The notes: generated by a model from the sequence alone, not told the origin. A DNA stretch of 64,000 nt from Haliotis cracherodii (GCF_022045235.1 NW_027266308.1:58900001-58964000); one strand, 5' to 3'. Counted from the stretch's first letter, positions 26,695-53,579 are shown. Translations and numbers: made by a program.

Positions 26695-29600
26695 ATGACA
26701 TCACACGGTATAGTACCGTTTACCATTCTTACGTGTGTCAGCGTTGCTCTGGTGTCTGGCGACGATGCATCAATGACGACAATGCCATCTTCTGTGGACA
26801 CGCCAACCCCAATTCCGAGCATGGACTGGCAAGGTAGATAACAGTAAATGTAGACTTTGATAGGCATTTAGAAGTTGGAAGAACATGAATATATGACGCA
26901 TTTTCATGGATAGCAACTTCCTTTTTTCTTTGTACGACGTTCCAGAGCTACTTTTTGTTCCTTTATCATTCGCTGATGAAGGAGCAAGCAGTAGCTCTAA
27001 AACGTCGTACAAAGAATAAAAGAAGTCGCTATCCATAAAAACGTGGCTTGTATTCAAAAGTAAATATGTTTTTTGTAAAACTTCCAATTCCTACAAACGT
27101 TGTTTCTCCTGTACAATTAAAAATATGTAATCTGTCTGGTAATATTGTTTATCATATAATGGGTAGGTTTCTCGGCAGGATAAACCCAACGGATAAAAAC
27201 GATATCCGTTGGGGTCATATGCGGATAGAGATGCACATATCAAAGGACAAGTATGGACTACTTTCACTGTTTATAAACAAACAAGTCGGCGATCGAGTCA
27301 GAATTAACCATCGGGAATATGGATAAACTACAGGGATAATTGCTATCATTATCAAAAGAACAGTCTAATATACTGACAATCAGTGTCTCACTGTGACGGA
27401 GCTAAGGTATTTTATAAGTTTTGGCAACTTTGGAGATATATAAATTTCGAAAGATTTGCGAGGGCACGAGTCCTAGCCAAGCGGGATCAGTAGCCATATC
27501 TGTGCTTGTAGACCTCTGCGGCTTGAAAAAAGTTGGATTTGGCCGAAATATGTTTGAATTGTTACCTTGTTTCTTTTTGTCGCTGTGTGTACATCTGACT
27601 ACACTTCTTAACGTTATGACAGGACAGATCGACTGTCAACAACATCTGACCGTGGCCGTGACGTCTCATAGACTAGGGTTAGAGTAGCTTCCCTTTGACA
27701 AAGGGCAGTTACTCCAGCTGACAGACCCATGGATTGCCGCGAAATTGTTGTGTTGCGTTTATGTTGCTTCGCCACTGTATAAGAAATAGATTTCAGTTGG
27801 AGCTATATTGGCTACTGTCACTGTCCGACTGACACACCACTTACCCTGTGACGTAATAAGTATTAATGCGCTCATTCCAGGAAAACTCGCAACGTTTCGG
27901 TAATGTTTGTGAGAGAGTGAAAGCGATTTTGAAGTACAGAATTAAAGAGTGACATTATATGATAAAGAGGTTATCACGCTTGTGTGTTTGGGGATGGTAA
28001 ATACAATAAGGCTCGCTAAATACAATTTTTATTCCTAATGCAGGATATTTCCCATCCCCAAACACACTCGCGTGATAACCTCTATTTATTGGCCTGTACT
28101 ATGGATGGAATCGACTGATTTGCTTATTTATATTGTGCCAGGAGATACTAAGTGTTTTCGAACATTCGACTTGATCATTTGTAGTGATGTGTTCTTTCTG
28201 TATATAAGTAATGACTTCAGAACCATTGGCTTTTGGCAGGTCCCCGCCCATTTCGTGGCTTTGGCCGTATATTCCGACCCTTCCGATGCCTGATAGGGTG
28301 TCGGTTTGGCAACGCCCCGTCTGACTGTACGTGTCCACGTCGACCAGAATATACCTGTGCTGTGAGTAGAATGGTAGCTTCTCTCTTTAGCAAATTGAAA
28401 TGTAATTTTAGAATCAAGGTGACATATTTACTCTGAATGCCGTTCTATTTACTTCAGTTTTTATCATTTGCAAGGTGGGGCACAAGTACTGACGTTGTCC
28501 TCTGGGTTTGTTTTGTTGGAATGAAGTATTGTACTGAATGAGGTCGATCTAATGCCAAGTCTTTTTGTTGTTTTTTGTTACATAAGCGGAAAGTCACTAT
28601 ATGGCTGGAAAATTGCCGATGTGACTTTAAATATTAACTCACTCACATAAGCGGAAAGTCGGTGGTTCGATCCCGAGTTGCGTCATACCACACGACGCTA
28701 AGTGCAATAATTTTTTACATTTAAATATGACAACCCCTCTGCAGGAGGTCACGCCAGATGAACGTTCTAATCAGCTCGCTGACATGGCAGTTTTTGATAT
28801 CTCGTTTCAACGAAATCATCCAGAACAACTTATCGGTATTCTGTATTTCATAACCATGCCAAATCTCTGGTGCTCTGCGATTCCGACTACAGTATACTGA
28901 TGTGTTTATGAATCAACATACCATGTGTTCGCTATATAAAGGGAGCACCTGTCACAAACACATGCATATGCAAGTCAATTATTCACCACCTCCCCTAACG
29001 TGACTCCTATTGAGGGTTTATCATATTTTGACTGTTATCAATTAGAACCACAGAGTCCGTTCAGGCAATGGTTTCCTATCGTTTAATGTGTACCCATAAT
29101 GTGTTTCAGCAATTGAAATGTACAGATGACAAGGTGTGTAAGGTGTTGTTTGGCCGATTCCCCCGCTGTGTTAGAGATCAGGCAGGTAAGTCGCACAGCG
29201 TCTCCAAATGATCGTAGTGTAGCAATAGTATTATTCATCACATACTTTTACAAATCTACACTGTTACTGTCGTCTTATTAAAATCTTAATGCAACACGGG
29301 GTCCTGTCATGCAATAGAGATGTTAAAAACCATTTAAATGAAATATAAATATTGCCAATGCAAGAGAATATCCACTCTAGATTATCCTCCGAAACAGATT
29401 CCATTTGGCGTCAAGGGCAAAATAGCTTTGAAAATTATATGAATGGACCACTGGAAGTCAGTGATGACACCAGGTGTTGGCGAAGAGGGTGAGCATCTCC
29501 TGCCCTAACACATTGAACACCGCAAAAAACCTGATCAGGTGCCTGGACACCTCGCCTATATTTCTTAAAAGAATATTTTTCTCTACCTATGATTCCAGAG

Positions 29601-30351
29601 CTTGGACCGGTTTTATCCGGATTGATAGATTGATAAGAATATTATTGAATTTTCAAACTTCATTTATCTGATCTCACAACTGTACGAGACACAATTTCCT
29701 TACCATAAGGCATAACGTACCGTTGCTGTGTAACATATATTTTGCAGGGTTTGTAGGGATTGTTACATGCTGGTATTGTCATTGTTTGTACGTGCTTGTC
29801 ATTCCATTCCCTTTGACAATCCGAGTTAGATTTGGCCTCCTTAACTCATGCGACTAACGGGTTCGGGTGGGCAGGCTCTTGGTTGACGCATGTCATCGCA
29901 TCCCAATTACGTTGATCCATGCTCATGATGTCAATTACTGGATCGTCTGTTGCTATCGCTTCTTGCCGTTTGGTATTTTCTTGAAGATGTTTTGTTATTA
30001 ACTGTAAATTTCTCAGTTAACTTGTCAATGGAGACTCGTTTCGGAAAGCGCCATTTTTGTTATTTGACCAGCGTGCATTCCTTCGCTTCCAACAATTTTC
30101 TCGATGTGAGTAACATAATATTTGACTCGACACAAGAAATAGCCTATTTTTATACATCTGTAGTTTGTGAACTGAGCAAGGACGCAGGGACATGTTCAGA
30201 GCTGGTGCACCGTTTCTACTACAACAAAGCCACCAGAAGGTGCGAGGAGTTCCACTATGGCGGCTGCGGAGGAAACGGAAACAACTTCCGGAACAAGAGG
30301 GCGTGTATGAGAACCTGTAGGAAGAGAGGCGCCTTCTTTAACAGACCTTAA
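26695..30351 (+). CDS. Secreted FOLN + BPTI/Kunitz domain protein A (174 aa, 4 coding exons)
   Basis: Exons 26695-26833, 28240-28361, 29110-29185, 30164-30351; all GT-AG, phases 1-0-1, frame open. MTSHGIVPFTILTCVSVALVSG...GPRPFRGFGRIFRPFRCLIGCRFGNAPSDCTCPRRPEYTCA|QLKCTDDKVCKVLFGRFPRCVRDQA|[52 protein letters not shown]. Kunitz signature FxYGGCxGNxNNF; AATAAA 30510. Confidence 0.88.
27966..28082. mobile_element. Fold-back / MITE-like palindrome
   Basis: About 37-bp arms AGAGGTTATCACGCTTGTGTGTTTGGGGATGGTAAATA and TATTTCCCATCCCCAAACACACTCGCGTGATAACCTCT. Confidence 0.7.
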
Positions 30352-32014
30352 CATTGTAACTGTAGTAAATCCATGCTTTACTTGAATTCCATGTAGACCA
30401 GAGCCGTATTGTCGTATCCACATAAAGTTGATCACACGTCATGCATCATTGCCAAAAATTGAAAAATAACTTGAGTATTGTCTTGAATATTGTCCATCAA
30501 TCGTTTTACAATAAAATGTGTTAATTTGGAATATTTTGTTTTTGAATGCCTCGTGATTAATACGCAGATTCGCCAAGGTATAAATCCTTGAATCGATCTG
30601 TCAGGTACAGGCCCATGGTCATTTACATTGAAACAAACGCTGATCTCAAGCCAAAATGCCCCTTCCTCCCTCTTATTTACGAGGGAATAAGTGAATATAT
30701 AATCTTTCCCACTTATACGAACGCCGACATTTCTGACTGTCAAGCTCTGACATTTGTGCTGTGTCGCCTTAGCTGAGTGATGGCTGGTGATTATTACAGT
30801 GATGTCAGACTCAAGCAAACTTGACAAACAGAATTTAGAGTCAGACTGGTTCTGTCTTGACAATAATCTGCAGTCAAGTATAACTGGAGGTTGATTTATA
30901 GCAAGATTGACCAATGAACAACCGCCTTTTAGCATAGGTCTCTAGCTTATAATATTTATAATATTTTATTTTTCAAACATGTGATGTTTTCCCATAATTA
31001 TTATGATGAATATCAGGATTTTAAAAAGTTGAAATTTACCATGCTCAGGGCATGGCGCGACCAGCCGATTGATAGAACCGGGCCCATTCTAACACCCGTC
31101 CAGGTGAACTTAGGGTCCAAGTGGTGTGTTGGGCAAAGGAACCGGTACCGTCCTCTTGGAACCAGACTACCTTCTTCCACCGACAGAGGGGCGCAACTCA
31201 CGACAAACTGGTTGCCCAAGTTTGTCGCCTCTTTCGACAAGCAGTAAGGTACTCGTACTGGGGACACATTCTACGCCGGGTCCCCACGAGGCAGCACTGA
31301 AAGATATCATTATTATGTTAAAACATTTCTTCGGTTTGACACATGGATTACGTTCTTCTTATTCCGGGTAGGAATATAGATCCCTCACAACCTCTGATTG
31401 TCATATAAATCGCCTAATTGATCGGGCGGTTAGACTCAGTGACTTAGATGACTGCATGTCCAAACTGCGTGGATCGATGCTCTGGATTCTCTGATCCATA
31501 TTATATCATTACACAGAACACCATTTTATATTAGAAATATATGCGCTGAAGAACAAACAAACATTTTCGTTTTCATAAGAAATGTCTGCCAAAATTGCAC
31601 AATTCCAGCAATATCATGAGCAAGCGTCCATGAATCACCATCAATAGGTGATGATACCAGGTGGTCGCGACACGGTGAGCGAATCCTGCCCCACCGGTGG
31701 TACCGCAAATAACTGAAGCAAATGCAGGACTTCAATTGTTCACCTGGAAAAAAAACCCCGAAACGTATGGTGAACGTAAGTTAAAATAGGGAATAACATC
31801 TGACACCATTTATGTCACTGATGCGGTTACAGGAAGCATATGAACATAGCACACGTTGGTAGCATGAAGCGTGGAATGGCAAATAAGGTTGAACACAAAG
31901 AGACGATGGAAAAAACAAGAAGCACGGGAATGGTGGCAGTGAGAAATCGAACGTGTCAGCTAAATGTGGGAGGAAAACCCGAAGTTTTGATGTCTCAGTT
32001 GTTTAACATTTTGG

Positions 32015-32061
32015 GTGAAATAGGGTTTAACGTCGCTTCAAAATTATTGCACTTATATAGC

Positions 32062-32123
<62 letters not shown>

Positions 32124-32379
32124 TGTGTGTCTGTGTGTTGGGGCTGCTTGTACTAGTCCGGAATGTTGCCGATTTATAGTGCTAGCCCACTGAGATACCA
32201 TGCCGAAGTTTAACATGAATATCCCACTCAGACATAGTATAATGATTCCGAGCCGACCAGTCCTTGTTTTAGCCTCTTAATGCCGAGCGCAAGGCAGGGT
32301 AACAACAAGTACCACCTTTCAACGTCTTTTGATATGACGCGGCCGGTCGGACGCTCTTCCACTAGACCAAGGAGGCGGT
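32015..32379 (-). mobile_element. SINE family A with internal (CA)n
   Basis: Reverse complement of the family A head and core; (GT)n at 32065-32135. Confidence 0.85.
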
Positions 32380-33841
32380 CCTGTTGAGACTACAGTCGAC
32401 TGCTAGTATATCATAAGCATGTGTTTCTGAATCACTATGAAATAGTGATGATACCAGATGTTCGCAGAAATGTGAGCGTATCCTGCCCCGGCGGTGGCAC
32501 TCGTCACAAACACATGCAAAGGGAAGTCAATTGTTCAGCTGAAAAAACAGGGAATTGCATAGGACATCACGTTTGTCACGAATTAGTCAAATTTGGAAAT
32601 GTCCCCAAAATGTCTTCCATAAAGCGTTTTGAAAGTTTTACTGAGGCCTTGACTGATGTGACCTTGATCTAACAACTTCTGAGCAAGAGTCGTATGACGC
32701 TCACGAACAACGTATGATGTTTTCAAATGGAGGATTCCAACCCACGATCATAGGATGCTGGCATGTCTAAGGGGCGCAACTCTGCAAATTAATCGCAACG
32801 TCTTAGACGATCTGGCAATCCGTGGCCCCAACCTGCTTGTCTGACAGTATGTGGTGAAACATTTCCTAATATTTTTTGAATGTAGGTGATAAAGCGCCAT
32901 TGGACATGAATTAAAAACTTTGTATGGAATACATTTAGATGAGGTTTCTATGCGAGCCATGCTCTGCATTAACGATTTAGACCTCTTCCACTGGCCCACA
33001 CCCTCAGGAAAGACACCTGCAACCGTTTTAAAAAAAAGTCACTAGTTGACGTAGCCAAGGGCCATTTTATGACGTGAAGGCCGTATATTTATAGGTTTAA
33101 AGTGGCTGTCTACTATCGACACTGCATTCCAAACCGGATTCACACAATGTTGACAATATGCAGCTGTTACGTGCAGTAAGCTTGAGAACTAACCTACCGG
33201 GTAAAATAAAGTATACATTCATGTTTGATGATGGCTAAAAATCAACCAAACAAGAAATGCTCATTCAACGGTGAAGTATTTGATACGGGTATAAAAGTTA
33301 TGTTTTTGGACTGAGAGATTGTAGTGTTTCAGTGGCTGTTTGTAAAAAAATGTTTGGTCAAATTGAATTTCCAAGTTAATGCTTTCGTTTGACAGACAGT
33401 TTAGTTACAGGCTTGAGTATTAGTATGTTTTAAAGACAAATAGTTTTCGATTGATCTACGTAAGTACCCATTCCTCTCCCCTTTACACATATCCCGTATG
33501 GAATTTGGGTTAGAATAGGGCCCCAGAAATTGATGCTGGTCGCAAGAGGCGACTTAATGAATCGGGTGTTCAGGCTCAGTGACTTGGTTTGATGGCATGT
33601 CGTAGTTCCCCGACGACAGGGAACTTTGCTCGACATGTTTAAACTTTTTGCGAACACCTGGTGTCATCACTGTTTTTATTGATTCTTTCATGTGATTTTT
33701 TTCACTATCTCGGCAGATAATCAAAACTGATTATTTTTACATTAATAATTTGTATGGATTGTCGGTTCCAGAGTGGATTATTTGCAGGTCGCCACCATTT
33801 ACAAACAAACAATACATACATCTCACGCGCGCGCACGCACG

Positions 33842-33875
<34 letters not shown>

Positions 33876-34778
33876 ATAAGTACAAAACACAGTTAACTGA
33901 AAGAAATTCAAATACTGTTTGTCAAATTCGAATACTGTTTACTGCAGGGTTTAGATTTCCAGTTTTAATAGACCATCGACAGACGTAGTGTGTAACTAAT
34001 TTAATGTTTTGATCTACTTATAATTATCACTTCCCAAACATTCATGGAAAGACCAATTTTGCTTGCAACTAAACTTTTGAATCAAGGTCAGATCCCACCA
34101 TCACCCAAACACCCAGAATATGAAATATTCTCTCCCTAATCCTTTTGCATTTTGGGTCAAGCTCGTGGGGTTCAGATGGGATTATGGTTTATGCTATGTA
34201 GTTTTATGGCCAGTTCTGTACTGACGTGGGATTTAGTCTTTCGGTGATAAATGTCCATTTTCAAGGCAGACATCTTTGAATGATTCATGCTGGAATTTGT
34301 ATGCTGTAAAAACAGACAACACTTGACACTAATGTAAAGTGAATTTGCCATGTGACTATGTGCCTTCATACGATTCATGTAAGTATTAAGGAAATAAAGT
34401 TACGAGATTGTTTACAACGTCACATAAGTCGGACAGAACAGGGGGAGTGCAACTGTCTACGTTTCCATATCCAGTGAAGTAGCTTATTCACGTTTCCAGG
34501 TATGTACATGTACATGTAGAATGTTCTACGTAGAAAAGTCTTCTTAGATTTCAGATGATATAAATATGCAATAATCAATATAATATGTGAACGACATTTC
34601 TTACAGTTGAACAAGGTGAATATAAATGAATTGCAAGAATAGATGCAACACCGAAACATGTTAAAGTAGTATTTACACAGAAGTCGTATTCCCTTAAGTT
34701 GCATGTATTTATTACACCATTTCAAAGACTAGCAGTATCCATTATACAAACTTCAACTGTTACTTCTTCCTGTAGGTG

Positions 34779-36779
34779 ATGATGAGTAAGATGATGCTTG
34801 TCGTGGCCTTGATCATAACCTGTGCTATATCTCATGGCCATGGTGTGGCTGACACTAATGAAACCACGTCCCAGAGAAGGGCAACTTCCATGGCTTCAGC
34901 TGAAGGTGAGGATACAAAGTTAGCTGGCAATATTTATTATATATATGTTTAGAAGTAGTTATCCTGGATGTATGTAGTATTCACAAGAACGGTCAAGGGT
35001 TTAGTGATCCCAGTATATCAACACTCGTTCTTGAGGGCCGCATTTTGCATAACGGTTCGAATAACAGTCATCTAATATCTGAGACATCTTAGAATAACTA
35101 GCCTTCATGCAACAGGGGTGCAACTGTCTTGGGAGACGTAAATTTCTATTTTTTCATCAGCATAGACAACCACCGTGAAATAGTTTTGAATGTGGTACGT
35201 AGATGACCATTTTCATCACAGATGGCGTCCAGACGTACATGTACTTGATACTTTATAGGGCCTTACGTCCTGGGCTATATGAGAACAATTCGCTGTTTCT
35301 TCATCTGTCGGCGAGGTTTGACGGACACCCGCTGTGATTGTTCCAGGTGTAAGGTAAGATTTAATTGATCGATCGTATTTCATGATTTTGAATATTTCAA
35401 AGAGAGGAAAGCGGAAGTCACAAAATGTTTGGTACAAGACTATTACATTGATACGTATCGTCATTTTAAGGAAATTGCTTAAACACAATTGTACATGTAG
35501 TGCCACGCTGGTGGCTAGATGGATGGATTAGGCTCAACGGGTGTTGGTGATACAACTGATGAGAATGTTTGGCTGTATGACTGAATGCGGATCAGTATTT
35601 CAGTTATATTACGGACCGGTGAAGATCCTGATTAGAATAGGTCTTCAGCAACCCAGGCTTGCCATAAAAGGCGACTGTGCTTGTCATACGAGGCGACTAA
35701 CGAGACCGGGTGGTCAGGCTCGCTGACTGGGTTGATGCATATCATCGTTTCCCAATTCCGTAGATCGATGCTCATGATATCAATCACTGGATCGTCTGGT
35801 CCAGACTCGATTATTTACAGACCACGGTCATATAGCTGGAATATTGCTGAGTGGGGCGTTGAACAACAAACAAACAAAAGTTATAGTAGAGGGAGAAAAT
35901 CCCGACGTAATGAACGTATTATACGCTTACAACTTTAATGAAGCCCATGAGCACAGGTATGGCGCTATAAACCAAGAACCATAATAAGGGAAAACCGGGT
36001 ATTGGAACCCACGATCATAGAATTCTAGCACATCTCAGGTGGCAACCATATTTAGCGATCGGGTCAACAATAACCCATGAAATGCGTTGCAGTCAGATAA
36101 TTTCATATTACTACTTGTACGCTTACATGTCTATCTCGACCTGCACATTAGTGCTTTTGTTTTGAGTGTCTAAAAATGTCACCAGTATGTCAGTATAATA
36201 GATGGAATCGAAAACAATGAAGAATGTGCGCGGAAACGTATGCGTATCTTAAAACAATTACACATTTTCAGACTAAAGTATGCCAAGCAGGTCAGCGGTG
36301 TAAAATGAATGAGGGAAATCCAGTCTGTGTTGCTGATCGCGAAGGTAAGGGGACAGTTATACTTATGCGTCTTTCTGTTTATCAAACACAATTCATCTCA
36401 GATGCGTAATTTGAGGACGATACATGAACGCAAATACATACGAACAGAAAACACCAGCGACGACTTTTTTTTACAAGAATCTAGCCCTACGAGCAACTCA
36501 GCATCTAGAAACACTTATGTCATGAATCTGATTACATGAAAGCATCTTGACGTTTAAACTGTTTGTCATCTCAAATATGATAACCCCTGTCCCGTTTACA
36601 CAGTGTGCCAGTTGACAAGGGAACTTGGACCATGCAGAGCTCTCATGCCGCGATATTTCTACAACCAAGCCACCCGTCGATGCCAGCAGTTCTATTATGG
36701 TGGTTGTCAAGGAAACGGCAACAACTTCAAAACCCGTGGGGACTGTGTTGCTACGTGCAGGAGAAGAGGCGTTGTGTAA
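34779..36779 (+). CDS. Secreted FOLN + BPTI/Kunitz domain protein B (156 aa, 4 coding exons), P1 Arg
   Basis: Exons 34779-34905, 35259-35353, 36272-36344, 36604-36779; GT-AG, phases 1-0-1. MMSKMMLVVALIITCAISHG...GPYVLGYMRTIRCFFICRRGLTDTRCDCSRCK|TKVCQAGQRCKMNEGNPVCVADRE|[58 protein letters not shown]. Canonical six-Cys Kunitz. Confidence 0.9.
35614..35877 (+). mobile_element. SINE-like family B, full length
   Basis: GACCGGTGAAGATCC...GAGGCGACTAA...GCTGGAATATTGCTGAGT...(AAAC)n. Confidence 0.85.
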
Positions 36780-39549: not shown

Positions 39550-39584
<35 letters not shown>

Positions 39585-40414: not shown

Positions 40415-43400
40415 ATGAATATCAAACCGTTTATATTTGTGGTAATTCTGACATGCGCAGTAGTGTGCGTGACGGGTGATGACAAGGAGGAAATAACCAC
40501 AACGGCACCGGTCACAACAGGGAAACCAGGTACAGACTGCACACAGTGGCCTCGCCTTTATTACTTTGATACCACCTAAGTGCATGTACGCGCATATTAT
40601 TCATACTAGTCGAGGCGCAGGCATGTTAGAATAGTCAACTGTAATTTGTATGTCAGAGTGTTTAAGCAAATATTCACAGAGATTACGGTACACGTTACTT
40701 GTCAGACACATGAGGCTGCATATTTCGGAGTTTTCCATCTCTCGCCAGCTCTGAATTTATATTCCTACATGAAATAATAAAACTTTTTCCTATCTGAATT
40801 TTCCCCGCGGCTTTGGAAAATTGTGCCCAGATATTCTACTTACATTGCACACTTACAAGCCCAGGTCACATTAATCTTTCTGTAGCAATATGAATTAAGA
40901 ATTCCTTTCTGAAGCAAAGCGATTCGATCTACGTCATAAATTGATTTGAAGACTGTTACTTAAAATATCAAGGATAAATTACACAATCAGTAAAAAACAG
41001 CTGGTCTTTCTCACCTTTTCAGTTTTTTAAATGTTATTTCGCCCACCAGCTCTTTTGCTAGTAGAGGGTGAGATGACAAACACATAAAAATATTGTGGCC
41101 TTATTATGATGTCGAGCGTCATACCCTAGCTACTTTGGCCTTTTGAGCAAATGTCTTTGATATGGCGAAAGGAAGTTAGCTGTTAAAGATGTCATATATC
41201 TGCCGCGTGAGTCCAAACAATATAAGGCAAATTTATAAAGCAAGTCAAATATCAAACGTTTGTTTGTTCGTCATCATTTGGAAAGCCAAATACATGTGCC
41301 ATTTTTTTAGAACCTCTATTACCCCGAAGGTTAAAGCTGTCGAATGTTTTCTATTGACTTCATCTGAATGACAACCTTTTTCTTTGATCTTTATGCTTTT
41401 AAGTGGTCAACTCTATAATGAATTTGACATTTACAAACGATATCGATGACCTTATAGCTGGACAAGTTCAAATAGAGTCGTAAGGTTTCGAGCGATTGAG
41501 TTTCTGGGCCATTCCAAGGCACATTGGAACAAATGAAAGATTTATAAAATAATTACATAAATGTTCCCTGGACATGCCAGATTTAACTCGTTAAGTAGTA
41601 TAGATGAGGGGGATACTGTGCCACCAATCCGTGAACCAGGTCCAGCCCCTGACAATGCTTCCATGTTTGTCTTAAGCTTTATCAATTATGTGATGTCAAT
41701 TACTGAATTGTCATGATTGGCATCAATATTTATCAAAATGCCATCCTATATCGAGGAAACAATTTATTCTTAATCTCCCACCAGTGCTCTAGGTTTGGTA
41801 AGGAATGCTTGGCGTGCTCGTTGTCTCCCCGGTTCTATGATCTTTTAGACAATGCGGTCCACGTGATCCACATAAACTGATGCGGCAAGCAATTCGCTGT
41901 GCAGAGTTGCGTTCCTTGGTCGCACCAGAAACCTATGATTGTGGGTTCGAGTCCCGGTTCGCCCCGATTATGTTTCTACGTTTGTCAGCACCATACCCGT
42001 GCTCGTTGGTTTCACTGAAGTGGTAAACGTCTAAGACCTACATTACTTCGGGCTTTCCTCCCACATGAAGCTGACACGCCGTGATATAACTGGAATACTG
42101 TAAAAAAGGGCGTTAAAACCAACTCACTCACTCACTCATGATGCGGCAAGACGCTAACCATTACACAACAATTATGAGATGCCACATGCTATCATTTGAA
42201 AATCCATATTACTATGTTGTTATTCTTTAAATAGTTTGGTAAGTACTTACCAAATTGTAATGACAATATTCCTCCTGCGCATACCATTATTTCGGAAATA
42301 TTTATATCTTACAGTTCTGCTAAGTTCTTCGTTCATTTCCTAGGAGACCATACTGAATGTTCTCTTTCCTTTTTCACACATGTAAAGAATCAATTGATAT
42401 CCATGATAAGATACCCTTGCGGTAAGGGAAAATATCTCGAAGCAGCACTGACATATAGGCGGGGTAGCCTGATGGTTCGTCACGCCGATGACCTGGGTTC
42501 GATTCGCAACTTGAATACAATGTGTGAAGCTCATTTCTAGTGTCCCCAGCCATACTGATTCACTTATACGAAGAGGTATTTGTATTTGTCCCACTCGTTT
42601 TTATTGAATTGTTTATGTTACTCCTTGACATTACAGAAATGCATATTACAGCTCCGCCAAGTTACAAGCCAGACACCCGTCCTCAGCTCTTCAGCTGCTA
42701 CTATCTCTGCCAGATCGGGATGGGGAGCTTGTACTGCAGGTGCCCGCAGAGGGTTACATGCAAGGTGCTGTACACTTCTTAATCATCGACATCACATTTT
42801 GCCGTTATGTGAAAGCCTATTTGGGGCGTCATGAAATTGTTACATCTTATGTACTTGGGGTTAATGCAGTTTCATATTGTTCCCTGTACCTACATGTATA
42901 TGTATGTTGTATATCGAACCACTTACGTTCCAGACAAAGAAGTGTTCTGATGGCTACGTATGCAGTGAGGTATACGGACATGCCCGCTGTGCGCCGGATA
43001 CATCAGGTGCGTGGATGTGTCGCTTTCTACCTTTCTGTGTTTTGTCCCCTTAATCGTGCCAGGATCCGCTGTTCCTCGATAATAACCCTTTACCTGTAAG
43101 TACCATAGCCGGGTTCCTCGGATTTCATCAAAGTAATAACTGACATTAACATTTCCTTGTTAGCCATGCATATGTCATATATCACTGCTGCATGCAATTA
43201 ATGGCGCTGTTATGTTAAGTTTATTCAAATTCTGTTGTCACACGCACAACGTTAACACTTGTGTTGACAAGGCACTCACCAGTTACAATAGAATCACATC
43301 CCGAAAGTACTTTACAAGAGCTGATGGTATTTTTAACGTGAACTGGTTTTTGTGTTTCCAGTGCATACTTGCGATATGGTTACAGGCAAAAACATTCTTG

Positions 43401-43641
43401 ACGTGACACCGTACATTGCAATTATTGTGCTATATTCTATGTTTGTGTTATTACAGTGTATAGGCTCCCTAAAGTTAGCGGAAACTGCAAGGCTTACCTG
43501 CCCCGGTACTACTACAATTGCTATTCCCGGAGATGTGAGAGTTTCATCTACGGCGGATGTGGTGGAAACGGAAACAACTTCAAGACGCTCGACGAGTGTA
43601 ACCGACGCTGCAGAATCCGGTACAGAGGGGATGCCTATTGA
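40415..43641 (+). CDS. Secreted FOLN + BPTI/Kunitz domain protein C (about 166 aa, 4 coding exons), P1 Lys, atypical Cys pattern
   Basis: Exons 40415-40529, 42637-42764 (alternative in-frame start 42652), 42934-43006, 43457-43641; phases 1-0-1. [21 protein letters not shown]...[24 protein letters not shown]|[24 protein letters not shown]|[61 protein letters not shown]; AATAAA 43720. Confidence 0.88.
41890..42138 (+). mobile_element. SINE-like family D, 5' truncated, with 12-bp TSD
   Basis: Flanked by TGATGCGGCAAG at 41878-41889 and 42139-42150; (ACTC)n tail. Confidence 0.9.
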
Positions 43642-45886: not shown

Positions 45887-46297
45887 AGGGGGGTTGGGTA
45901 GCCTTGTGGTTAAAGCATTCAATCGTCAACCCGAAGGCCCTGGTTCGATTTCGCACATGGTTTGTTTGTTTGTTTGTTTTTTGTTTAACGCCGCACTCAG
46001 CAATATTCCAGCTATATGACGGCGGTCTGTAAATAATCGAGTCGGACCAGACAATCCAGTGATATATATCATGGGATACAATGACATGCATCAACCAAGT
46101 CAACGAGCCTGACCACCCGACCCCGTTAGTCGCCTCCTACGACATGCATAGTCGACTTTTACGGCAAGCATGGGTTGCTGAAGAACTATTCTAACCCGGA
46201 CCTTCACGGGTCGCACATGGTCACATTGTGGGAAGCCCATTGCTGGTGTGCCCCACCGTGACCTGGCTTGACTATTGATAAATGCTCATCGACTCAC
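45887..46297. mobile_element. Nested SINEs: family B (-, about 45962-46212) inserted into family C (+)
   Basis: The family C head is interrupted; TCGCACATGGT is duplicated at 45951-45961 and 46211-46221. Confidence 0.88.
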
Positions 46298-47987
46298 TGA
46301 TACATGCCGCTTTTCGTGAGTTGGAATCTCATCTATTATTATCCTTGGTACGTGCAATGGATAGGTTTATGATGCTTATATCATTCGTCGATACTGAAGT
46401 TTCTTTCTGATACCTGATGTCGTCACTGGTTTCCAGTGATCCATATATTTTTTTATATAGATATTTGGTCTTTTACGCCCAATGGAATTTTTTTCTGCAC
46501 ATAATCGAGAAATGGGCTTCACACAATGTACCCATGTGGGAAACCGAATCAGGACTCTCGGCGTGACGAGCAAACGCTTTAACCACTTGGCTATCCCACC
46601 ACCCCACGTCCTGTAAATCATTGTCAATGACAAATGAAAAATTATATTTGATGAATAAACACTTGACCGTTAACATAATCGGCAAACCTGATTATTTCAT
46701 TGACGAGTTTCCCACAAAGGTCTTCAATGTGATTGATGTTTATGAGGTGTTGTTTGAAGTCGCACTTCCTGCTCGAGGGAAATTTCAACGTCCTGTCGTC
46801 AGTAATTCTGTCTTATAAATGTCGAGCGATACAAACACTAAGGAAAGAAACAACTGTCTCAAGGGAAAACATTCCACTTCCAGATAGTTGCGTGAAAATC
46901 GTGGTCAGGTAAGACATACTGCAGACATTCCAGTGTGCAGGTATGTTCATGCCCTCTCTACTCGATTTATACTGTAAGTAAATGCACTACACTGTTATTC
47001 AAAACACTGAATATACCTTGAGTTGTTTTAATAACAATAGTTTGTAACTTGACACAAACTAAACGTGACAAAGGCGTGAAGACGTTACAGACGGACCACA
47101 CATGGCTTAAAACAGTTGAGCAATTGCAAAATATACCAGCATGATTTTTATCAATGACACAAAATCGGCCGGTATAAAATAATTCGCCAATGAATCATTT
47201 CGTCCATACGCATCAACTTCGGTCAAGCACCTTCACTGTGATTTTGTTTGTGTGAAAGTCTTTGCAAACTAACTGATCAAGTTAGCAGTGGTTTCGATGA
47301 TGCATATACGAAAAGTGGCCTCACCTCCCCACCTATGCTTGTGACGATCCATATATATTTGACTGGCAGTTGGCGTTGTGGACGGAGGACACGTGCTCCA
47401 TATATACAGATGGTGTACAAGATACCGTTACAAGTGACAACGCACCTTTCACCCCCGTAAACAGTGACTCTGCCAGGCTTTAATATTTCACTGGCTCACA
47501 GATCTCCCCATCTGTGTGCACCAGTAGCATGCCAGGTGCCATTCATGGCATCGCTAGAAGATGAAAAAGTTATTTTACCAGCAACCATGTCTACACTGAC
47601 CTTGCATTGATGTAGTATGATGTATCCCCGATGACGTGACAGGACCCCCAGGCTTCGTGTCTCCAACGTGCTGATGTTATATCACTGATACATGCATTGG
47701 ACCAATGCATTAATGTTTGGTGTCTCGTATTATCATGCAATATGTATTGCCAATGACATAAGCAATTAGGCCAGATCTTGATTGAAGAGATAAATACATT
47801 ATGTGTGTTCAGATTTTATCGAGTTTTCGATGTCCGAAAGTTTTATTTTGAAATTTTGGATTTTGAAATGCATGGAGTTGGCATGATGTGAAAAACCCCA
47901 AACTTAATCGCAGTGGTTCTGATAAATATTGATCAGTTAATATTTGATTAAGCCAAAACAAATGACACGTTTGTAAAAACTGATTGT

Positions 47988-48232
47988 GTGAGTGAGTTGG
48001 GTTTGACGCCGCATTGCATTCTTCTTACATCACGGCATGTCAGCTTCGTGGGAGGAAAGCCCGAAGTGATGCCGGTCTCAGACGCTTAACACGTTGGTGA
48101 AATCCACGAGCACGGTTATGGTGCTGACAAACCTGGATACAAACTTAGAACTCGGGCCGAAGCGGCATTCGCACCCACAGTCATAGGTTTCTGGCGTGCC
48201 CAAGGGTCGCAACTCTGTAGAGAGAATTGCAG
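47988..48232 (-). mobile_element. SINE-like family D
   Basis: Reverse-complement similarity to 41890-42138. Confidence 0.8.
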
Positions 48233-50057
48233 CGCAAAATATTAATAAGATACTTATAAAGAAGGGTCGTTATACACTGAGACTAGTCTGAAAGCATACA
48301 CTCCCATTTGTTTTGTTTTACATCTTATGAATAAGCAAACGAAACTCAGCGAAACATGACATAGCCAGGCTTATGATAGAGACCTTTACACCAAGTCTGT
48401 TCGCTGTGATGTTCGTTGTTAAACTATTCAACCAATCATTAAAATGACAAGGCAAGACAGATATGAATGATGGATGTGTTTACCTATGCTGTTGAAGTAA
48501 ACATGGCAATGTACTTGTATCGAAAGGTCAAACGGACAAAGGAATAATCCATGCACAGATATATTGGTAGTGATATATACATACAAACTTGGGGTATATC
48601 TATTCTTTTTTTGTGTGTGCACTTCAGACCATAAATAACGATGATATAGGTAAGTGTTCATTAAAGATGTGGAGTATCAATTAAAGTCAAACAATAAAGA
48701 CCAATAACGCCACACCTTTTCCTCCATTATGTTTTACAGACATGGGCTGAGAGCGGTGTTAAACAACACACAAACATATTCAGTGTATTAATACGCGTTG
48801 AACTTAATTTCCGCATGACGTAATCACGCTGAAGGGGATAATATTTTTTAAAGGTAATTATTTAAAATTTTATTAGCATGATTCCATAATTGCCTGTTTC
48901 AAATTAATAGTACATGAATATGATCAATTTAAATCATCTCAATCAGCATTCCCCAGTGAGTGCTAAAAGGGTGTGTTTAAATATCTGATCCAGGTTATAT
49001 GGCCTATGGAAAAGAGAGGGAGCAGTGACAGGGAGATTGATGGGCTTCGGACGTCCGTACATTCCACTAGTCGCGCCCGGGACTGCACCTCCACCTGGCC
49101 ACACTAGGCACAAAGTTCAGCCGTGAGAGGGCGCCGCTATTTTATGACGTCGATGACGTAACAACCACAATCCTATACCAGTATCGGACATATACGACCT
49201 GTTGGGTGAGTACTGTCCCTTTTTATCGCATGTTCTTAAGCTTTTAAATTTATTTCGAATCGTAATTGAAATTTACATTCTTATACTGTTTATTAAACAT
49301 AAAATGTCCATAGTTTCAACTTTTATCATATAGACAAAATGCTCAGTTATCAAACATTTAATCATTTAAATGAACTGTGGACCAAGGCATATTACACGAA
49401 ATGACTTTAGGTCAGGTTTGGTCTGGTATAACGATTCGTCCGAAATTATATCAAGAACAACCAACTCGGGACACAGTTAAATAACCTTGACCTTCACGCA
49501 AGAAGGCTGTTTTTGGAACACGCTCAGACATTATAGCAAACAAGTTGATTTGAGTGTGAAGAGCAGGTAATTCAAAACACTCATTTAGTTTCGTCTCCTT
49601 TTCTTTTCTTGTGACAAAGATGTGATGACGAATACCGCAATGACATAGACCTTTATATGTCTTGTATGTCACACAACGGCCTTCAATCCATATTTTGTGG
49701 CTTTATTTCGGGAGTATGCAGTGCAAAAGAACGGGTGTATTCAGCATGAATGTCCAAATAAGAAAACCTTGCTTCGTTAACAAAATTGAATAGTGTTGAC
49801 ATGAAATCATCAGGCTTGGGGTTATAATATAGTGGATGTAGAGGAGAGCTGTGCCGGCAGGGATAGAGGTGTTAAGTTATCAATCATCAATAAAGCCCCG
49901 AACACTTCCGGTTCAGATGCTAATGTTTGATACTCCCTATGTGACTGCCAAGGTCAAACAGTCCTTGCTCTGAAAACAACACGAATCTTGTCTACCGGAA
50001 GCAAGTTTTACAACTATAACTGTTTTTGGAAAAGAACTTTGATATTTGTCAATTAAC

Positions 50058-50285
50058 NNNNNNNNNNNNNNNNNNNNNNNNNNNNNNNNNNNNNNNNNNN
50101 NNNNNNNNNNNNNNNNNNNNNNNNNNNNNNNNNNNNNNNNNNNNNNNNNNNNNNNNNNNNNNNNNNNNNNNNNNNNNNNNNNNNNNNNNNNNNNNNNNNN
50201 NNNNNNNNNNNNNNNNNNNNNNNNNNNNNNNNNNNNNNNNNNNNNNNNNNNNNNNNNNNNNNNNNNNNNNNNNNNNNNNNNNNNN
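50058..50285. other. Assembly gap (N run)
   Basis: 228 N. Confidence 0.99.
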
Positions 50286-50700
50286 AAGAATACATTTAGT
50301 TAAATACATGAGCTGCATTAGATTGAACGAAAACTAAACACAAAAAGACCTGAGGGATGGATATTGTAATATTAGTCACGTGGAATAAATGTGACTGATG
50401 GTTATTATTGTTAGAAATAACCCTAAAACTTGTTTGTCATTGTATCAGGTCATGTTTTCCAAGTACACATTTGCTGAGTAGTTCTTTTGTATTGTGATAT
50501 TCAATTTTCAGGAATATTTATATCCAGAAATACCATGCTGTTTATTATTTATATAAGAACATAATGTTTTATGGTCTCACAGATAATGTTAAGATATGGA
50601 GTAAAAAAAGTTTAGAACCTACGTGTAGATCCAGCTTATGAATATGTATCCAATATTGTATTTTTTAGAGTCAACTTTCAATGCCGGATTCACGTTAGAT

Positions 50701-53579
50701 ATGACTGATTACATGATGAAAACACGTACTGCGTTGATTGGGAGCCTCCTGGTGTGTATCCTGGTGGCAGTGGCGAGTCAAGGAGCTGAGGAGCCTTCGA
50801 ATCCAGGTATATCACGAGCTGTAAACGTGCAGCATTGTTTTATTTTCATGCAGAATAAATGACACCTTTATGGATAGAAACTTATTGTATTCTTTGTCAC
50901 GACGTTCCAGAGCTACGTCTTGCTCCTTCAGCAGGTGAATGCTTAGTAAGTGCATTAAATTAGTCATGATATGTTTATACAAGGTGAGATGAATGTAACA
51001 AAGATAACAATATAATGACAACGCCAATGACACAGGATTAATGTACAAAGAATGGTTTAACGTCGCTATTCACAATATTCCTACAATGTCACGGTGGGTG
51101 AACCAGATATAGCTTCGAACAATGTACCCATGTTGAGAATCGAACCCGGGCCTTCGGAGTGACGAGGGAATGTTTTATATGAGCGCTTGGCTACCCACCA
51201 GCCCCTGATTCAGAATGATGGAGTAAAAAGGCATCAGTGGTACACCATGAGCACCAAAGTATTCACGTGAACTCATTCAAACAATCAAAGTCCCTCGATC
51301 AACTGGAGAACAAAATAATAAGATGTCCAGTTGTTACGGTTTCTCATCTCATTGGCCTGTCAATGTCAATTTAAATGATCTTTCAGGATATCTCATAACC
51401 GTATTGCACTGGGAAGAGCACATTGTTTAATGCACCGTTCTCACACTGTTGGGTGAGTGCATAGGTTGCTTGGGACTCAAACTGGTCAGCTGTTGAGTCA
51501 AGCATTACACAAATAGAATATACTTGATTGTAATAGCAGCTGCGTTTGTTTTCGTAAGTCCTGTTTAATAGTCTATTAACGTTCCGTTTCAGGTCTCGCA
51601 ATGTCTGGGCATCCTTCTGCACGTCTGTGTAACCAAATGTGTCGACAGAAGCCAGTTGTGGACAAGTGCCAGTGTTCGTCCAAAGCAGCATTGCCTTCGA
51701 ATCCTTGCCAGGTACTAGAATTTTCATAACATATCTGGAAAAGCACTCGCTGTATTATGCCACAGTACATATTCATTTGTTTCTTTAATATATATAAGTT
51801 TTATTTTCTCTCAAAAAAGGAGATATTTGAAAATAGCAGATGATAACATAAATACAAAGAGGTATCAAATGATGACAATTGATCGATAAGCAAAAAGGAA
51901 GGACTAGGTGCTACACGGGTGTGTACTGTAGGAACGTTTGAGATGACTTGATCAAAATGGGTCATGCTTCCACGATTGGTCAAACATTCATTTGTAGGGC
52001 ATGGCATGGTCCAAATCAATCTTGAGTCTTGTTCACTCCTCTTACAACTCTTAGCCAAGTTCAACCAACGTAACGGGTAACTTTCAACTTCGGCGTACAC
52101 GTCTCCAGATCATGTCCTCGCCATGCTTTATGGGACAAAACACAGGATGCATGACTGGTCATTGCATTCTGGTGAAGGTTTGCTGCTGGAGGTGGCTCGG
52201 TGGACACGAGCGCCATCGTCTTATAAGACAAAAGGTGGACAAGCATGGCGCGCAGACAGCACAACTATTGGCGCCAGTATGTTGTCTCGGTAGAACTGTT
52301 CAGTAGCTCTTCCAGTGGGCGTTCTGGCAGCCATACTGATCCCGCCATCCATAGCGATACAGACCAACCCCAAATCTGCAATATTGACGTTTGCGTGACG
52401 TTCGTTATAACGCCTTCATACACGTACACGCCTATGATAATGTCGAGATCGAAAATTGTAATACTAATTGCTCGAAGCAATTTGAAGACCTTTTTCTGAA
52501 GTGTCAAAATCAAGAAAGACTCCCTACACTGAGGAATTGCATGGTTACGGTTAACTGGGGCGTTATCGTTTCCTTTCGAAACCGTTCTGGCCTCATTTGT
52601 CAAAGCTGATTTGAACACCGATCCTAACATATATATTTCATGACCCTCTATATTTTTGGAGTGTATCTAAACATGATATACGCATACATGTAACCTCATG
52701 CGTAAGTACAAAACGAATATGGTGTGGTATGGATAGATGTAAACTGTCGATTCTTTTCACAGAACAAAAAATGTCGATTTGGGACCCGATGCACCGCCTT
52801 TGGAAGCAGGCCCGTTTGTCTCCCAATGCCGAAAGGTACGATGCCGTTTAAACACAATGTCAAACTCTGAATCTTGATTCAACCAAGTTATTTATGCACT
52901 CACTCATTCATTTTGGGGACGTGTACTGGGGTTTGTGTTATCATTTCTGTGACCCAATAAAGATTCGAGGTAGAACAGGTCTTCAGCAACCAATGCTTGC
53001 CGTATAAGGCGACTAACGGGGTTGGGTGGTTAGGCTCGCTTGGTTGATGCATGTCATCGTATCCAAATTGGGTGGATCGATGCTCATGATGTCAATCACT
53101 GGATTGTCTGATCCAGACTCGATTATTTACAGACCACCGTGATATGGCTGGAATATTGCTGATTGCGGTGTTAAACAACCAACAAAACATAACTTCTGTA
53201 CCTTGTTCAAAATACAACTGTTGCATTTCTACTGTATTTGTCTCGATGTGTTTTCTTCATTTTCCAACTTCTTACATTGATTTACGTCCATTTACTCGTT
53301 ACGGGTTTCTTATGTTACCACATGGCTGCTTAATTCACGTTGGTTATCCATGTGGCTACTGTATATAACATGTGCTTGGGATAACATGAGGACGTCCGTG
53401 TTGCAGCGTGTTTGCTCCCCCAGATGAGAGGTCTGTGCACAGGTACAGTAATCCGCTACTACTTCAACCACCGATCCGGCAACTGCGAACCTTTTGTCTT
53501 CGGAGGCTGCAGCCCTAATGCCAATAACTTCATTAGCATACAGCTATGTCAAAAGATTTGTATGATGATACAAGGCTGA
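50701..53579 (+). CDS. Secreted FOLN + BPTI/Kunitz domain protein D (about 156 aa, 4 coding exons), P1 Thr
   Basis: Exons 50701 (or ATG 50713)-50806, 51593-51711, 52763-52835, 53407-53579; phases 1-0-1. MTDYMMKTRTALIGSLLVCILVAVASQG...RLCNQMCRQKPVVDKCQCSSKAALPSNPCQ|NKKCRFGTRCTAFGSRPVCLPMPK|ACLLPQMRGLCTGTVIRYYFNHRSGNCEPFVFGGCSPNANNFISIQLCQKICMMIQG*. Six-Cys Kunitz. Confidence 0.88.
52951..53185 (+). mobile_element. SINE-like family B
   Basis: GGTCTTCAGCAACCAATGCTTGCCGT..AGGCGACTAACGGG...GCTGGAATATTGCTGA. Confidence 0.85.

What the first reader, a model, noticed from the sequence alone, without database searches (positions are those of the whole stretch)
26695..53579. Hidden four-gene family: signal peptide / CxxxC-x8-CxC / FOLN / Kunitz
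Seen: four co-oriented genes with the same 4 coding exons and intron phases (1-0-1), with exon 3 of 73-76 nt. Cysteine spacing is kept despite strongly diverged sequence. The FOLN-like pattern C-x4-C-x5-C-x8/9-C spans the exon 2/3 junction. Known: in follistatin, SPARC and agrin, FOLN is followed by a Kazal domain. Here it is followed by a Kunitz domain and preceded by an extra 4-Cys module. I do not recognise this small three-module architecture as a described family (inference of novelty).
Basis: partly seen in the sequence, partly recalled or inferred. Interest (0 to 1): 0.85.

Follow-up and report, generated by a model that had tools for sequence, protein, structure and literature searches.

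The report
Abalone Kunitz inhibitor gene cluster
Four neighbouring black-abalone genes each encode a small secreted protein made of an abalone-specific eight-cysteine module followed by one Kunitz protease-inhibitor domain; the genes are real and partly annotated already, and only the unnamed front module is new.

Summary
The window is Haliotis cracherodii chromosome C45:58,900,001-58,964,000. It carries four co-oriented genes, each with four coding exons, GT..AG introns in phases 1-0-1 and an exon 3 of 76/73/73/73 nt. Each encodes a signal peptide, a Thr/Pro-rich linker, an 8-Cys module (C-x3-C-x8-C-x-C-x2-10-C-x4-C-x5-C-x8/9-C) and one Kunitz domain (Pfam 68-72 bits).

The assembly gap (50058-50285) lies 427 nt upstream of gene 4's start codon and touches no coding exon.

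The family is not hidden. RefSeq annotates gene 1 in this genome, and that protein is identical to my model from residue 36. Orthologues in H. rufescens, H. asinina and H. rubra show the same joins for genes 1-3, under ad-hoc names such as "eppin-like".

A fifth copy, partial and decayed, sits 5 kb upstream of the window.

The FOLN label is only partly supported. The Cys spacing fits, and weak Foldseek rows are mostly follistatin-domain proteins. Pfam finds no FOLN, WAP, EB or EGF, HMMER finds no relatives outside Haliotis, and the AlphaFold models are poor.

Most likely these are secreted canonical serine-protease inhibitors that have diverged in P1 (Ser, Arg, Lys, Thr). I rate it a new variant of a known kind, of moderate-to-low interest.

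The parts
25907..26003 (+). g1 upstream 5' exon with an in-frame ATG, used by the RefSeq 209-aa model; probably 5' UTR
   Evidence: The first 32 of the 35 extra N-terminal residues of P0135 map here. The donor is GT at 26004 and the acceptor AG ends at 26687.
26695..26833 (+). g1 exon 1: signal peptide and Thr/Pro-rich linker; ends in phase 1
   Evidence: P0135 from residue 36 is identical to the model.
28240..28361 (+). g1 exon 2: C-x3-C-x8-C-x-C-x7-C; ends in phase 0
   Evidence: the same join is in P0135, P0004 and P0005.
29110..29185 (+). g1 exon 3 (76 nt): C-x5-C-x9-C hairpin part; ends in phase 1
   Evidence: The H. laevigata transcript comp361360 crosses the e3/e4 join.
30164..30351 (+). 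g1 exon 4: Kunitz domain, P1 Ser, stop codon
   Evidence: Pfam PF00014, 71.8 bits.
34779..34905 (+). g2 exon 1: signal peptide and linker
   Evidence: orthologue P0138.
35259..35353 (+). g2 exon 2: C-x3-C-x8-C-x-C-x2-C
   Evidence: same join in P0138 and in the second unit of P0137.
36272..36344 (+). g2 exon 3 (73 nt): C-x5-C-x8-C
36604..36779 (+). g2 exon 4: Kunitz domain, P1 Arg
   Evidence: Pfam PF00014, 71.3 bits.
40415..40529 (+). g3 exon 1: signal peptide and linker
   Evidence: third unit of P0137.
42652..42764 (+). g3 exon 2: C-x3-C-x8-C-x-C-x5-C. A second possible in-phase acceptor lies about 20 nt downstream; the H. rubra model fits the upstream one.
42934..43006 (+). g3 exon 3 (73 nt): C-x5-C-x8-C
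43457..43641 (+). g3 exon 4: Kunitz domain, P1 Lys; Cys1 replaced by Tyr, with an extra Cys in YYNCYS
   Evidence: Pfam PF00014, 68.4 bits; compared with the H. rubra unit.
50058..50285 (.). Assembly gap, upstream of g4 and outside all coding exons
   Evidence: The g4 ATG is at 50713.
50713..50806 (+). g4 exon 1: signal peptide. In-frame upstream ATGs exist from 50638.
   Evidence: No orthologue was retrieved.
51593..51711 (+). g4 exon 2: C-x3-C-x8-C-x-C-x10-C
52763..52835 (+). g4 exon 3 (73 nt): C-x5-C-x8-C
53407..53579 (+). g4 exon 4: Kunitz domain, P1 Thr
   Evidence: Pfam PF00014, 68.1 bits.

Best explanation
This is a tandem array of four intact paralogous genes in Haliotis cracherodii, plus one decayed partial copy just upstream of the window. 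Each gene encodes a small secreted two-part protein.

The C-terminal part is a canonical Kunitz/BPTI domain. It most likely works as a standard-mechanism (Laskowski) inhibitor, with the residue after the second Cys (P1) entering the S1 pocket of a serine protease. P1 differs between paralogues (g1 Ser, g2 Arg, g3 Lys, g4 Thr) and is conserved between orthologues. The array therefore looks like a set of inhibitors split by target. g2 and g3 should inhibit trypsin-like enzymes; g1 and g4 have other targets or weaker activity.

The N-terminal part is an 8-Cys module, so far seen only in Haliotis. Among orthologues it is conserved about as well as the Kunitz domain. It probably consists of a short helix carrying C-x3-C pinned to a C-x-C strand, followed by a two-disulfide beta-hairpin with the Cys spacing of the FOLN/EGF-like hairpin of follistatin domains. 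Its role is inferred only: a binding or anchoring head, or a second interaction surface.

The module (exons 2+3) is bounded by phase-1 introns on both sides, and a phase-1 intron also precedes the terminal Kunitz exon. That fits assembly by exon shuffling, followed by tandem duplication before the Haliotis species split.

Shown: the gene structures, the Kunitz identity, the conservation and the annotation in relatives. Inferred: secretion, inhibitory activity, target classes, disulfide pairing and the fold of the module.
For: - Gene models have canonical splice sites and identical phases.
- All four exon 4 translations hit Pfam Kunitz at E about 1e-19 to 1e-20.
- The genome is H. cracherodii: the C45 length of 70,628,833 equals the contig length recorded for H. 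cracherodii RefSeq proteins.
- P0135 (XP_071080915.1) from residue 36 is identical to my g1 model.
- Orthologues with the same joins: P0004 and P0134 (H. rufescens), P0005 and P0138 (H. asinina), and P0137 (H. rubra, a read-through model of g1+g2+g3 in the same order).
- N-module identity between species is 64-93%, against 73-97% for the Kunitz part. Paralogues share little beyond the Cys: 3-29% identity at non-Cys positions.
- P1 is conserved within orthologue sets.
- An H. laevigata transcript from a hemolymph/tentacle library crosses the g1 e3/e4 junction.
- Both AlphaFold models (g2-type and g1-type) place a helix over C-x3-C and a hairpin over the last three Cys.
- 12 of the best 17 Foldseek rows are follistatin-domain proteins. 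Their short matches cover 25-26 columns at rmsd 1.3-1.5 A.
Against: - The g4 joins rest on sequence logic alone.
- There is no biochemical evidence for inhibition. P1 Ser with P1' Glu (g1) and P1 Thr (g4) are unusual for strong inhibitors.
- The structure models are poor (mean pLDDT 53; N-module 58-70). All fold matches are non-significant (Foldseek E >= 0.39; VIA-align found no Z >= 2).
- Pfam finds no FOLN or EGF.
- Signal peptides were judged by eye, not with a predictor. The RefSeq 209-aa model of g1 starts at an upstream ATG that would bury the signal peptide.
Confidence: 0.7

Rival explanations
1. Shell-matrix or extrapallial proteins. The family would act in biomineralisation, protecting the matrix from proteolysis or binding it through the N-module, rather than in general protease control.
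For: Kunitz and WAP inhibitors are established abalone shell-matrix components (PMC2989941; PMC6003135). One peptide of the H. laevigata g1 orthologue (DAGTCSEMVHR) appears in a nacre MaxQuant table. The array lies next to three secreted Gly-Asn low-complexity genes of the kind common among shell proteins.
Against: The identification rests on a single peptide (PEP 0.003, about 0.0003% of signal). The entry is absent from the paper's tables of accepted nacre and prismatic proteins (one search found it only in files 1, 10 and 20). It sits in the same list as histones. The transcript came from a hemolymph/tentacle library, not from mantle. The known shell Kunitz protein KCP has two Kunitz domains and is a different protein.
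Confidence: 0.15
2. Non-inhibitory effectors. At least g1 and g4 would use the Kunitz fold as an ion-channel blocker or toxin-like ligand. Alternatively the helix-plus-CxC part would act as a defensin-like antimicrobial head in hemolymph immunity.
For: P1 Ser and Thr are non-canonical. RefSeq's automatic names for truncated isoforms are 'kappaPI-actitoxin-like'. C-x3-C ... C-x-C is the cystine-stabilised-helix motif of many toxins and defensins (established knowledge). The transcript was found in a hemolymph/tentacle library.
Against: The automatic names only reflect best BLAST hits to Kunitz domains. No homology to any toxin or defensin was detected for the N-module. Abalones are grazers with no venom apparatus.
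Confidence: 0.1
3. Annotation artefact or dying genes. The shared pattern would be a relic, and some members would be pseudogenes that are not expressed.
For: A fifth copy (C45:58892032-58894942) lacks exon 1. It has lost the exon 3 acceptor (CAG to CGG) and carries a short in-frame deletion that removes Cys 8. g3 has lost Kunitz Cys1. g4 has no retrieved orthologue.
Against: All four genes have intact ORFs, canonical splice sites and an even Cys count. The N-module is conserved across species that diverged long ago. RefSeq models exist in four species. Only the exons keep collinear similarity between paralogues.
Confidence: 0.05

Closest known systems
Eppin (SPINLW1) and other WAP + Kunitz two-domain inhibitors
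   Same: A small secreted protein with an N-terminal 8-Cys (four-disulfide) module followed by one C-terminal Kunitz domain. RefSeq calls the H. rufescens orthologue 'eppin-like' and the H. asinina g2 orthologue 'WAP four-disulfide core domain protein 6A-like'.
   Different: The N-module is not a WAP domain. Pfam WAP gives no hit at E<=10, there is no CC doublet, and the Cys spacing differs. A genuine WAP+Kunitz gene exists elsewhere in this genome (L017) and looks different.
Follistatin (FS) domains of follistatin, FSTL1/3, SPARC, hevin, agrin and WFIKKN: a FOLN hairpin plus a Kazal domain
   Same: A two-disulfide hairpin with spacing C-x4-C-x5-C-x8/9-C lies directly in front of a small disulfide-rich domain of a protease-inhibitor type. 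The weak Foldseek rows are dominated by these proteins. The Atlas nearest cluster carries TILa/FOLN.
   Different: The following domain is Kunitz, not Kazal. The FOLN-terminal C-x-C that bridges to the Kazal part is missing. An extra C-x3-C-x8-C-x-C unit precedes the hairpin. Pfam FOLN is not matched, and every similarity score is below significance.
KCP (BPTI/Kunitz domain-containing shell-matrix protein) of Haliotis asinina and H. laevigata, and the Pinctada KCPs
   Same: Secreted molluscan Kunitz proteins, in the same genus. RefSeq names the H. asinina g1 orthologue after the Pinctada protein ('BPTI/Kunitz domain-containing protein 4-like').
   Different: KCP has two consecutive Kunitz domains and no 8-Cys N-module, and it is a major shell protein. 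The present family has one Kunitz domain and at most a trace, unaccepted shell identification.
EB module + Kunitz proteins of nematodes (Pfam PF01683; recalled from the Pfam description, not tested beyond hmmscan)
   Same: An 8-Cys module of unknown function that is reported to accompany Kunitz domains.
   Different: No PF01683 hit at E<=10 on any full-length family member.

Membership tests
Kunitz_BPTI (PF00014) | Profile HMM score above the curated cut-off | tested here: met
   68.1-71.8 bits against a cut-off of 21 for all four exon 4 translations. 70-72 bits for P0004, P0005, P0135 and P0138.
Kunitz_BPTI (PF00014) | Six Cys in the spacing C-x8-C-x15-C-x7-C-x12-C-x3-C | tested here: met
   Met in g1, g2 and g4. 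In g3, Cys1 is Tyr and an extra Cys lies between Cys2 and Cys3. The H. rubra orthologue keeps the canonical six.
Kunitz_BPTI (PF00014) | Inhibits serine proteases through the P1 loop | not testable with these tools
   P1 is Ser, Arg, Lys and Thr, read from the alignment to the BPTI spacing. Activity needs an enzyme assay.
FOLN (PF09289, follistatin/osteonectin-like EGF domain) | Profile HMM match | tested here: not met
   No FOLN hit at E<=10 on P0004, P0005, P0135, P0137 or P0138. HMMER's filters may hide very weak hits.
FOLN (PF09289) | Cys spacing C-x4-C-x5-C-x8/9-C | tested here: met
   Present in all four genes across the exon 2/3 junction.
FOLN (PF09289) | Terminal C-x-C, followed by a Kazal-like part | tested here: not met
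   After the fourth hairpin Cys come V-R, V-A, A-P or L-P. The next Cys is the first Cys of the Kunitz domain, and no Kazal domain is present.
FOLN (PF09289) | EGF-like beta-hairpin fold | tested here: inconclusive
   Both models show a hairpin over Cys 6-8, at pLDDT 58-70 only. Foldseek matches to Fs1, SPARC and hevin cover 25-26 columns at rmsd 1.3-1.5 A, with E of 2-5. VIA-align found no Z>=2.
WAP four-disulfide core (PF00095; 'eppin-like') | Profile HMM match and the CC doublet signature | tested here: not met
   No WAP hit at E<=10. No CC doublet occurs in any N-module.
EB module (PF01683) / Lustrin_cystein (PF14625) | Profile HMM match | tested here: not met
   No hit at E<=10.
Cystine-stabilised helix motif (C-x3-C paired with C-x-C) | Motif present, with C-x3-C in a helix | tested here: inconclusive
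   The motif is present in all four genes with an invariant x8 spacer. A helix is predicted over C-x3-C in both models, at low confidence. Disulfide pairing is not known.

The most novel reading that the evidence does not exclude
The 8-Cys region is a previously undescribed, abalone-restricted disulfide-rich domain. A cystine-stabilised helix would be fused to a FOLN-type hairpin, and exon shuffling would have coupled this unit to a Kunitz domain in place of the usual Kazal domain. That would make a convergent 'follistatin-domain-like' inhibitor architecture, with the front module giving each paralogue its own binding partner.
Probability: 0.3. Interest if true: 0.5.

Novelty: new variant of a known kind. 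Interest (0 to 1): 0.33.

Why it matters
Kunitz inhibitors are among the most often recruited secreted domains in molluscs, in shell matrix, immunity and venoms. A lineage-specific cysteine-rich module attached to them, kept for the whole history of the genus and split into paralogues with different P1 residues, would be a tidy case of exon shuffling followed by subfunctionalisation.

It also shows that RefSeq's automatic names for these proteins ('eppin-like', 'WAP ... 6A-like', 'actitoxin-like') are misleading, because the N-module is none of those.

The practical value is modest. The family offers candidate protease regulators for abalone hemolymph, mucus or shell biology, in an endangered species affected by disease. 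It does not open a long-standing question.

Tried and rejected
- **Exon 2 alone against Pfam:** nothing found.
- **Word-indexed search with the N-module of P0004:** only H. rufescens proteins.
- **phmmer of P0013** (signal peptide + N-module, no Kunitz) against 1.84 billion representatives: only the H. asinina orthologue and a low-complexity hit.
- **phmmer of P0013 against PDB sequences:** one spurious hit, E 1.2.
- **Profile search with P0004 plus the Kunitz exons of g2-g4,** intended to fetch orthologues of g2-g4: the list was swamped by multi-Kunitz proteins and gave no g4 orthologue. It did reveal the species.
- **MAFFT of exon fragments against P0013 or P0004:** exons 2 and 3 were misaligned, so no fragment-based profile was built.
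- **AlphaFold2, two jobs:** mean pLDDT 53 in both.
- **VIA-align wide search:** no Z>=2.
- **ESM Atlas:** 0.75 for both modules, below any useful threshold.
- **Other N-module + Kunitz genes in G000:** none found beyond this cluster at the loci inspected.
- **Literature searches for the RefSeq names and for abalone Kunitz proteins:** no description of this family.
- **Motif search for g2 and g3 in the H. laevigata supplements:** nothing found.
- **Spliced models:** I did not send joined spliced models to any search tool. Exons were searched by reference, and full-length work used database proteins returned by the tools. Exons were joined only inside local scripts, for translation and pairwise comparison.


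Full report
**What is there.** I translated the + strand of the four spans and read the splice sites directly. This gives four co-oriented genes, each with four coding exons.

- g1: 26695-26833, 28240-28361, 29110-29185, 30164-30351.
- g2: 34779-34905, 35259-35353, 36272-36344, 36604-36779.
- g3: 40415-40529, 42652-42764, 42934-43006, 43457-43641.
- g4: 50713-50806, 51593-51711, 52763-52835, 53407-53579.

Every intron is GT..AG and the phases are 1-0-1 in all four. Exon 3 is 76, 73, 73 and 73 nt. The products are 174, 156, 161 and 152 aa.

Each product starts with a hydrophobic signal-like N-terminus (judged by eye), followed by a Thr/Pro/Ser-rich linker. Next comes an 8-Cys region with spacing C-x3-C-x8-C-x-C-x(2,5,7,10)-C-x4-C-x5-C-x(8,9)-C, and then a Kunitz domain. 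The fifth Cys is the penultimate residue encoded by exon 2 and Cys 6-8 lie in exon 3.

Pfam calls Kunitz_BPTI on all four exon 4 translations at 68-72 bits, against a cut-off of 21.

**The gap.** The N run 50058-50285 lies in the 7-kb spacer between g3's stop and g4's start, with 427 nt between the gap and the g4 ATG. No coding exon touches it, so continuity and frame across it do not affect the four models.

g1 has a separate 5' exon about 690 nt upstream of its ATG exon (see below). A comparable g4 5' exon or promoter could therefore lie in or beside the gap.

**More than chance.** A six-frame scan of 144 kb around the window found the C-x3-C-x8-C-x-C motif seven times. Five of these lie 1.3-2.4 kb upstream of a Kunitz exon on the same strand.

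Between paralogues, collinear DNA similarity survives only in the Kunitz exon. Everything else that matches is dispersed repeat. Protein identity between paralogues is 35-53% in the Kunitz exon. In exons 2 and 3 it is only 3-29% outside the cysteines.

**Whose genome, and what is already annotated.** The genome search places the window at G000:C45:58,900,001-58,964,000 on a contig of 70,628,833 bases. That is exactly the contig length recorded for RefSeq proteins of Haliotis cracherodii.

I queried the stop-free ORF 29950-30348, scoring only its Kunitz part. This returned 'eppin-like' of H. rufescens (P0004, 174 aa) and 'BPTI/Kunitz domain-containing protein 4-like' of H. asinina (P0005, 174 aa).

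Their 90% clusters hold several further proteins:
- XP_071080915.1 of H. cracherodii (P0135, 209 aa, 'uncharacterized protein').
- A 157-aa H. asinina protein named 'WAP four-disulfide core domain protein 6A-like' (P0138), which is the g2 orthologue.
- A 509-aa H. rubra model (P0137), which is a read-through of the g1, g2 and g3 orthologues in that order.

P0135 from residue 36 is letter-for-letter my g1 model. P0138 and the units of P0137 show the same exon joins as my g2 and g3 models, including the upstream acceptor for g3 exon 2.

The family is therefore not hidden. It is annotated under a scatter of best-hit names, and nobody appears to have named or described it. I retrieved no g4 orthologue.

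**Transcript and peptide evidence.** I therefore have no reads for this genome.

There is indirect evidence. The H. laevigata hemolymph/tentacle transcript database, in the supplements of PMC6003135, contains comp361360_c0_seq1. Its reading frame runs ...RFPRCVKDKS-VCELTKDAGTC... and so crosses the g1 exon 3/exon 4 junction exactly as modelled.

One peptide of it (DAGTCSEMVHR) appears in a nacre MaxQuant table. It is a single peptide with PEP 0.003 and about 0.0003% of signal. It is not in the paper's tables of accepted proteins. I treat it as a hint only.

**Extra anatomy.**
- RefSeq's 209-aa g1 model adds 35 residues. The first 32 are encoded by an upstream exon at 25907-26003, with a GT donor at 26004 and an acceptor ending at 26687; the last three come from the start of the ATG exon. 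This in-frame ATG would bury the signal peptide. H. rufescens has both the 209-aa and 174-aa forms, so I take the exon as 5' UTR.
- A fifth copy lies 5 kb before the window (C45:58892032-58894942). It is 92-95% identical to g1, in introns as well as exons, from 16 nt before exon 2 to beyond exon 4. It has no exon 1, its exon 3 acceptor is CGG instead of CAG, and a short in-frame deletion removes Cys 8. It is a recent partial duplicate in decay.
- In g3 of this species the first Kunitz Cys is Tyr and a new Cys appears in YYNCYS. The H. rubra orthologue has the canonical six Cys. The Cys count stays even, so a re-routed disulfide is possible.

**What the N-module is.** Pfam at E<=10 on full-length g1, g2 and g1+g2+g3 proteins gives Kunitz only. 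It finds no FOLN, EGF, WAP, EB, Lustrin_cystein or TIL.

P0013 is a natural intron-3-retention model of H. rufescens, consisting of signal peptide plus N-module without Kunitz. It allowed clean searches:
- phmmer against 1.84 billion cluster representatives found only the H. asinina orthologue and one low-complexity hit.
- phmmer against PDB sequences found nothing real.
- The word-indexed search found only H. rufescens proteins.

Within Haliotis the module is conserved about as well as the Kunitz domain (64-93% against 73-97%). It is a constrained domain, not a spacer.

Two AlphaFold2 runs, on g2-type P0138 and g1-type P0013 with 8-row alignments, gave a mean pLDDT of only 53. Both place a helix over C-x3-C and a beta-hairpin over the last three Cys.

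VIA-align against 48,161 chains gave no Z>=2. Foldseek gave no row below E 0.39. Even so, 12 of its best 17 rows are follistatin-domain proteins: follistatin, FSTL1, FSTL3, SPARC/BM-40, hevin and WFIKKN2. The short matches cover 25-26 columns at rmsd 1.3-1.5 A and about 30-36% identity.

The ESM Atlas nearest cluster for both the g1 and g2 modules is the same TILa/FOLN cluster. The score of 0.75 is one that shuffled sequences often reach.

My reading is that the second half is plausibly a FOLN/EGF-type two-disulfide hairpin, roughly 60% likely. It lacks the C-x-C that ends a FOLN domain and bridges it to Kazal, and it fails the family's HMM, so I do not file it as FOLN.

The first half carries the classic cystine-stabilised-helix motif, C-x3-C with C-x-C. 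Pairing and fold remain to be shown.

**How it most likely works.** The Kunitz domains align to the BPTI spacing. The residue after Cys2 is Ser (g1), Arg (g2), Lys (g3) and Thr (g4). Each is the same in the available orthologues.

From established knowledge of canonical inhibitors, Arg or Lys at P1 predicts tight inhibition of trypsin-like serine proteases. Ser and Thr predict other targets, weak inhibition or a non-inhibitory use of the fold. The array therefore looks like a set of secreted inhibitors that subfunctionalised by reactive site after tandem duplication. That duplication predates the split of the H. asinina/H. rubra and North Pacific lineages.

The N-module (exons 2+3) is flanked by phase-1 introns, and a phase-1 intron also precedes the terminal Kunitz exon. 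This is the arrangement expected for modules assembled by exon shuffling.

The role of the N-module is inference only. It could be an anchoring or partner-binding head, or a second interaction surface. A shell-matrix role and a toxin/defensin-like role are kept as rivals.

**Comparison and novelty.** In layout the proteins resemble eppin-type WAP+Kunitz inhibitors, with an 8-Cys module followed by Kunitz. They also resemble follistatin domains, where a FOLN hairpin is followed by a small domain of inhibitor type.

Tests for the WAP, FOLN and EB families were done and were not met. The Kunitz membership test was met.

The finding is a new variant of a known kind: Kunitz inhibitors with a lineage-restricted, unnamed cysteine-rich N-module. 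The claim that the architecture has no name stands as far as I could search. InterPro architecture search and SMART were not available here.

**Limits.**
- There is no RNA evidence from this species.
- g4 has no orthologue support.
- The structure models are poor.

Noticed in passing
window 4100-7726 (+), 13656-13967 (+), 20888-21253 (+): Three secreted Gly-Asn-rich ORFs with near-identical signal peptides (M[KR]FAVFLLVLACVCAVA...). One is a 1209-aa (Gly-Asn) polymer and two are short (104 and 122 aa). They form a tandem array directly upstream of the Kunitz cluster and look like low-complexity secretory or shell-type proteins. The first is already noted by the scan as s1-823332.
   Followed up: partly
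window 1-2322, also about 11.97-12.4 kb and 18.5-19.5 kb: A tandem satellite with a roughly 35-bp register. Its self-matches are 87-95% identical, and pieces recur about 7 kb apart, in step with the Gly-Asn gene copies. This suggests a segmental triplication of about 7 kb.
   Followed up: partly
G000:C45:58892032-58894942 (L010 2032-4942), 5 kb upstream of the window: A partial duplicate of g1 covering exons 2-4 and their introns, 92-95% identical. It has no exon 1, has lost the exon 3 acceptor (CAG to CGG), and carries a short in-frame deletion that removes the eighth Cys. It is probably a young pseudogene.
   Followed up: yes
window 43457-43641 (g3 exon 4): In H. cracherodii the first Kunitz Cys is Tyr and a new Cys appears in YYNCYS. 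The H. rubra orthologue keeps the canonical six-Cys pattern. A relocated disulfide is possible.
   Followed up: partly
window 25907-26003: An upstream g1 exon with an in-frame ATG, used by RefSeq XP_071080915.1 (209 aa). It would place 35 residues in front of the signal peptide, so the start codon is probably mis-chosen.
   Followed up: partly
window 26349-26547 and at least 11 other places in the window, on both strands: A dispersed repeat of about 200 bp (SINE-like), 76-88% identical between copies. It lies in introns and spacers of the cluster.
   Followed up: no
L017 (G000:C5:3011001-3021000), minus strand, about 1935-4637: A genuine WAP-type exon and a Kunitz exon lie on the same strand, 2.5 kb apart. 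This looks like a true eppin-type gene and differs from the family in the window.
   Followed up: no
G000 contig C45: Kunitz exons are strongly concentrated on this chromosome, with clusters near 4.8, 8.5, 34.7, 36.5, 48.0, 54.4, 55.9 and 58.9 Mb. 52 of 66 hits to a Kunitz query lie on C45.
   Followed up: no
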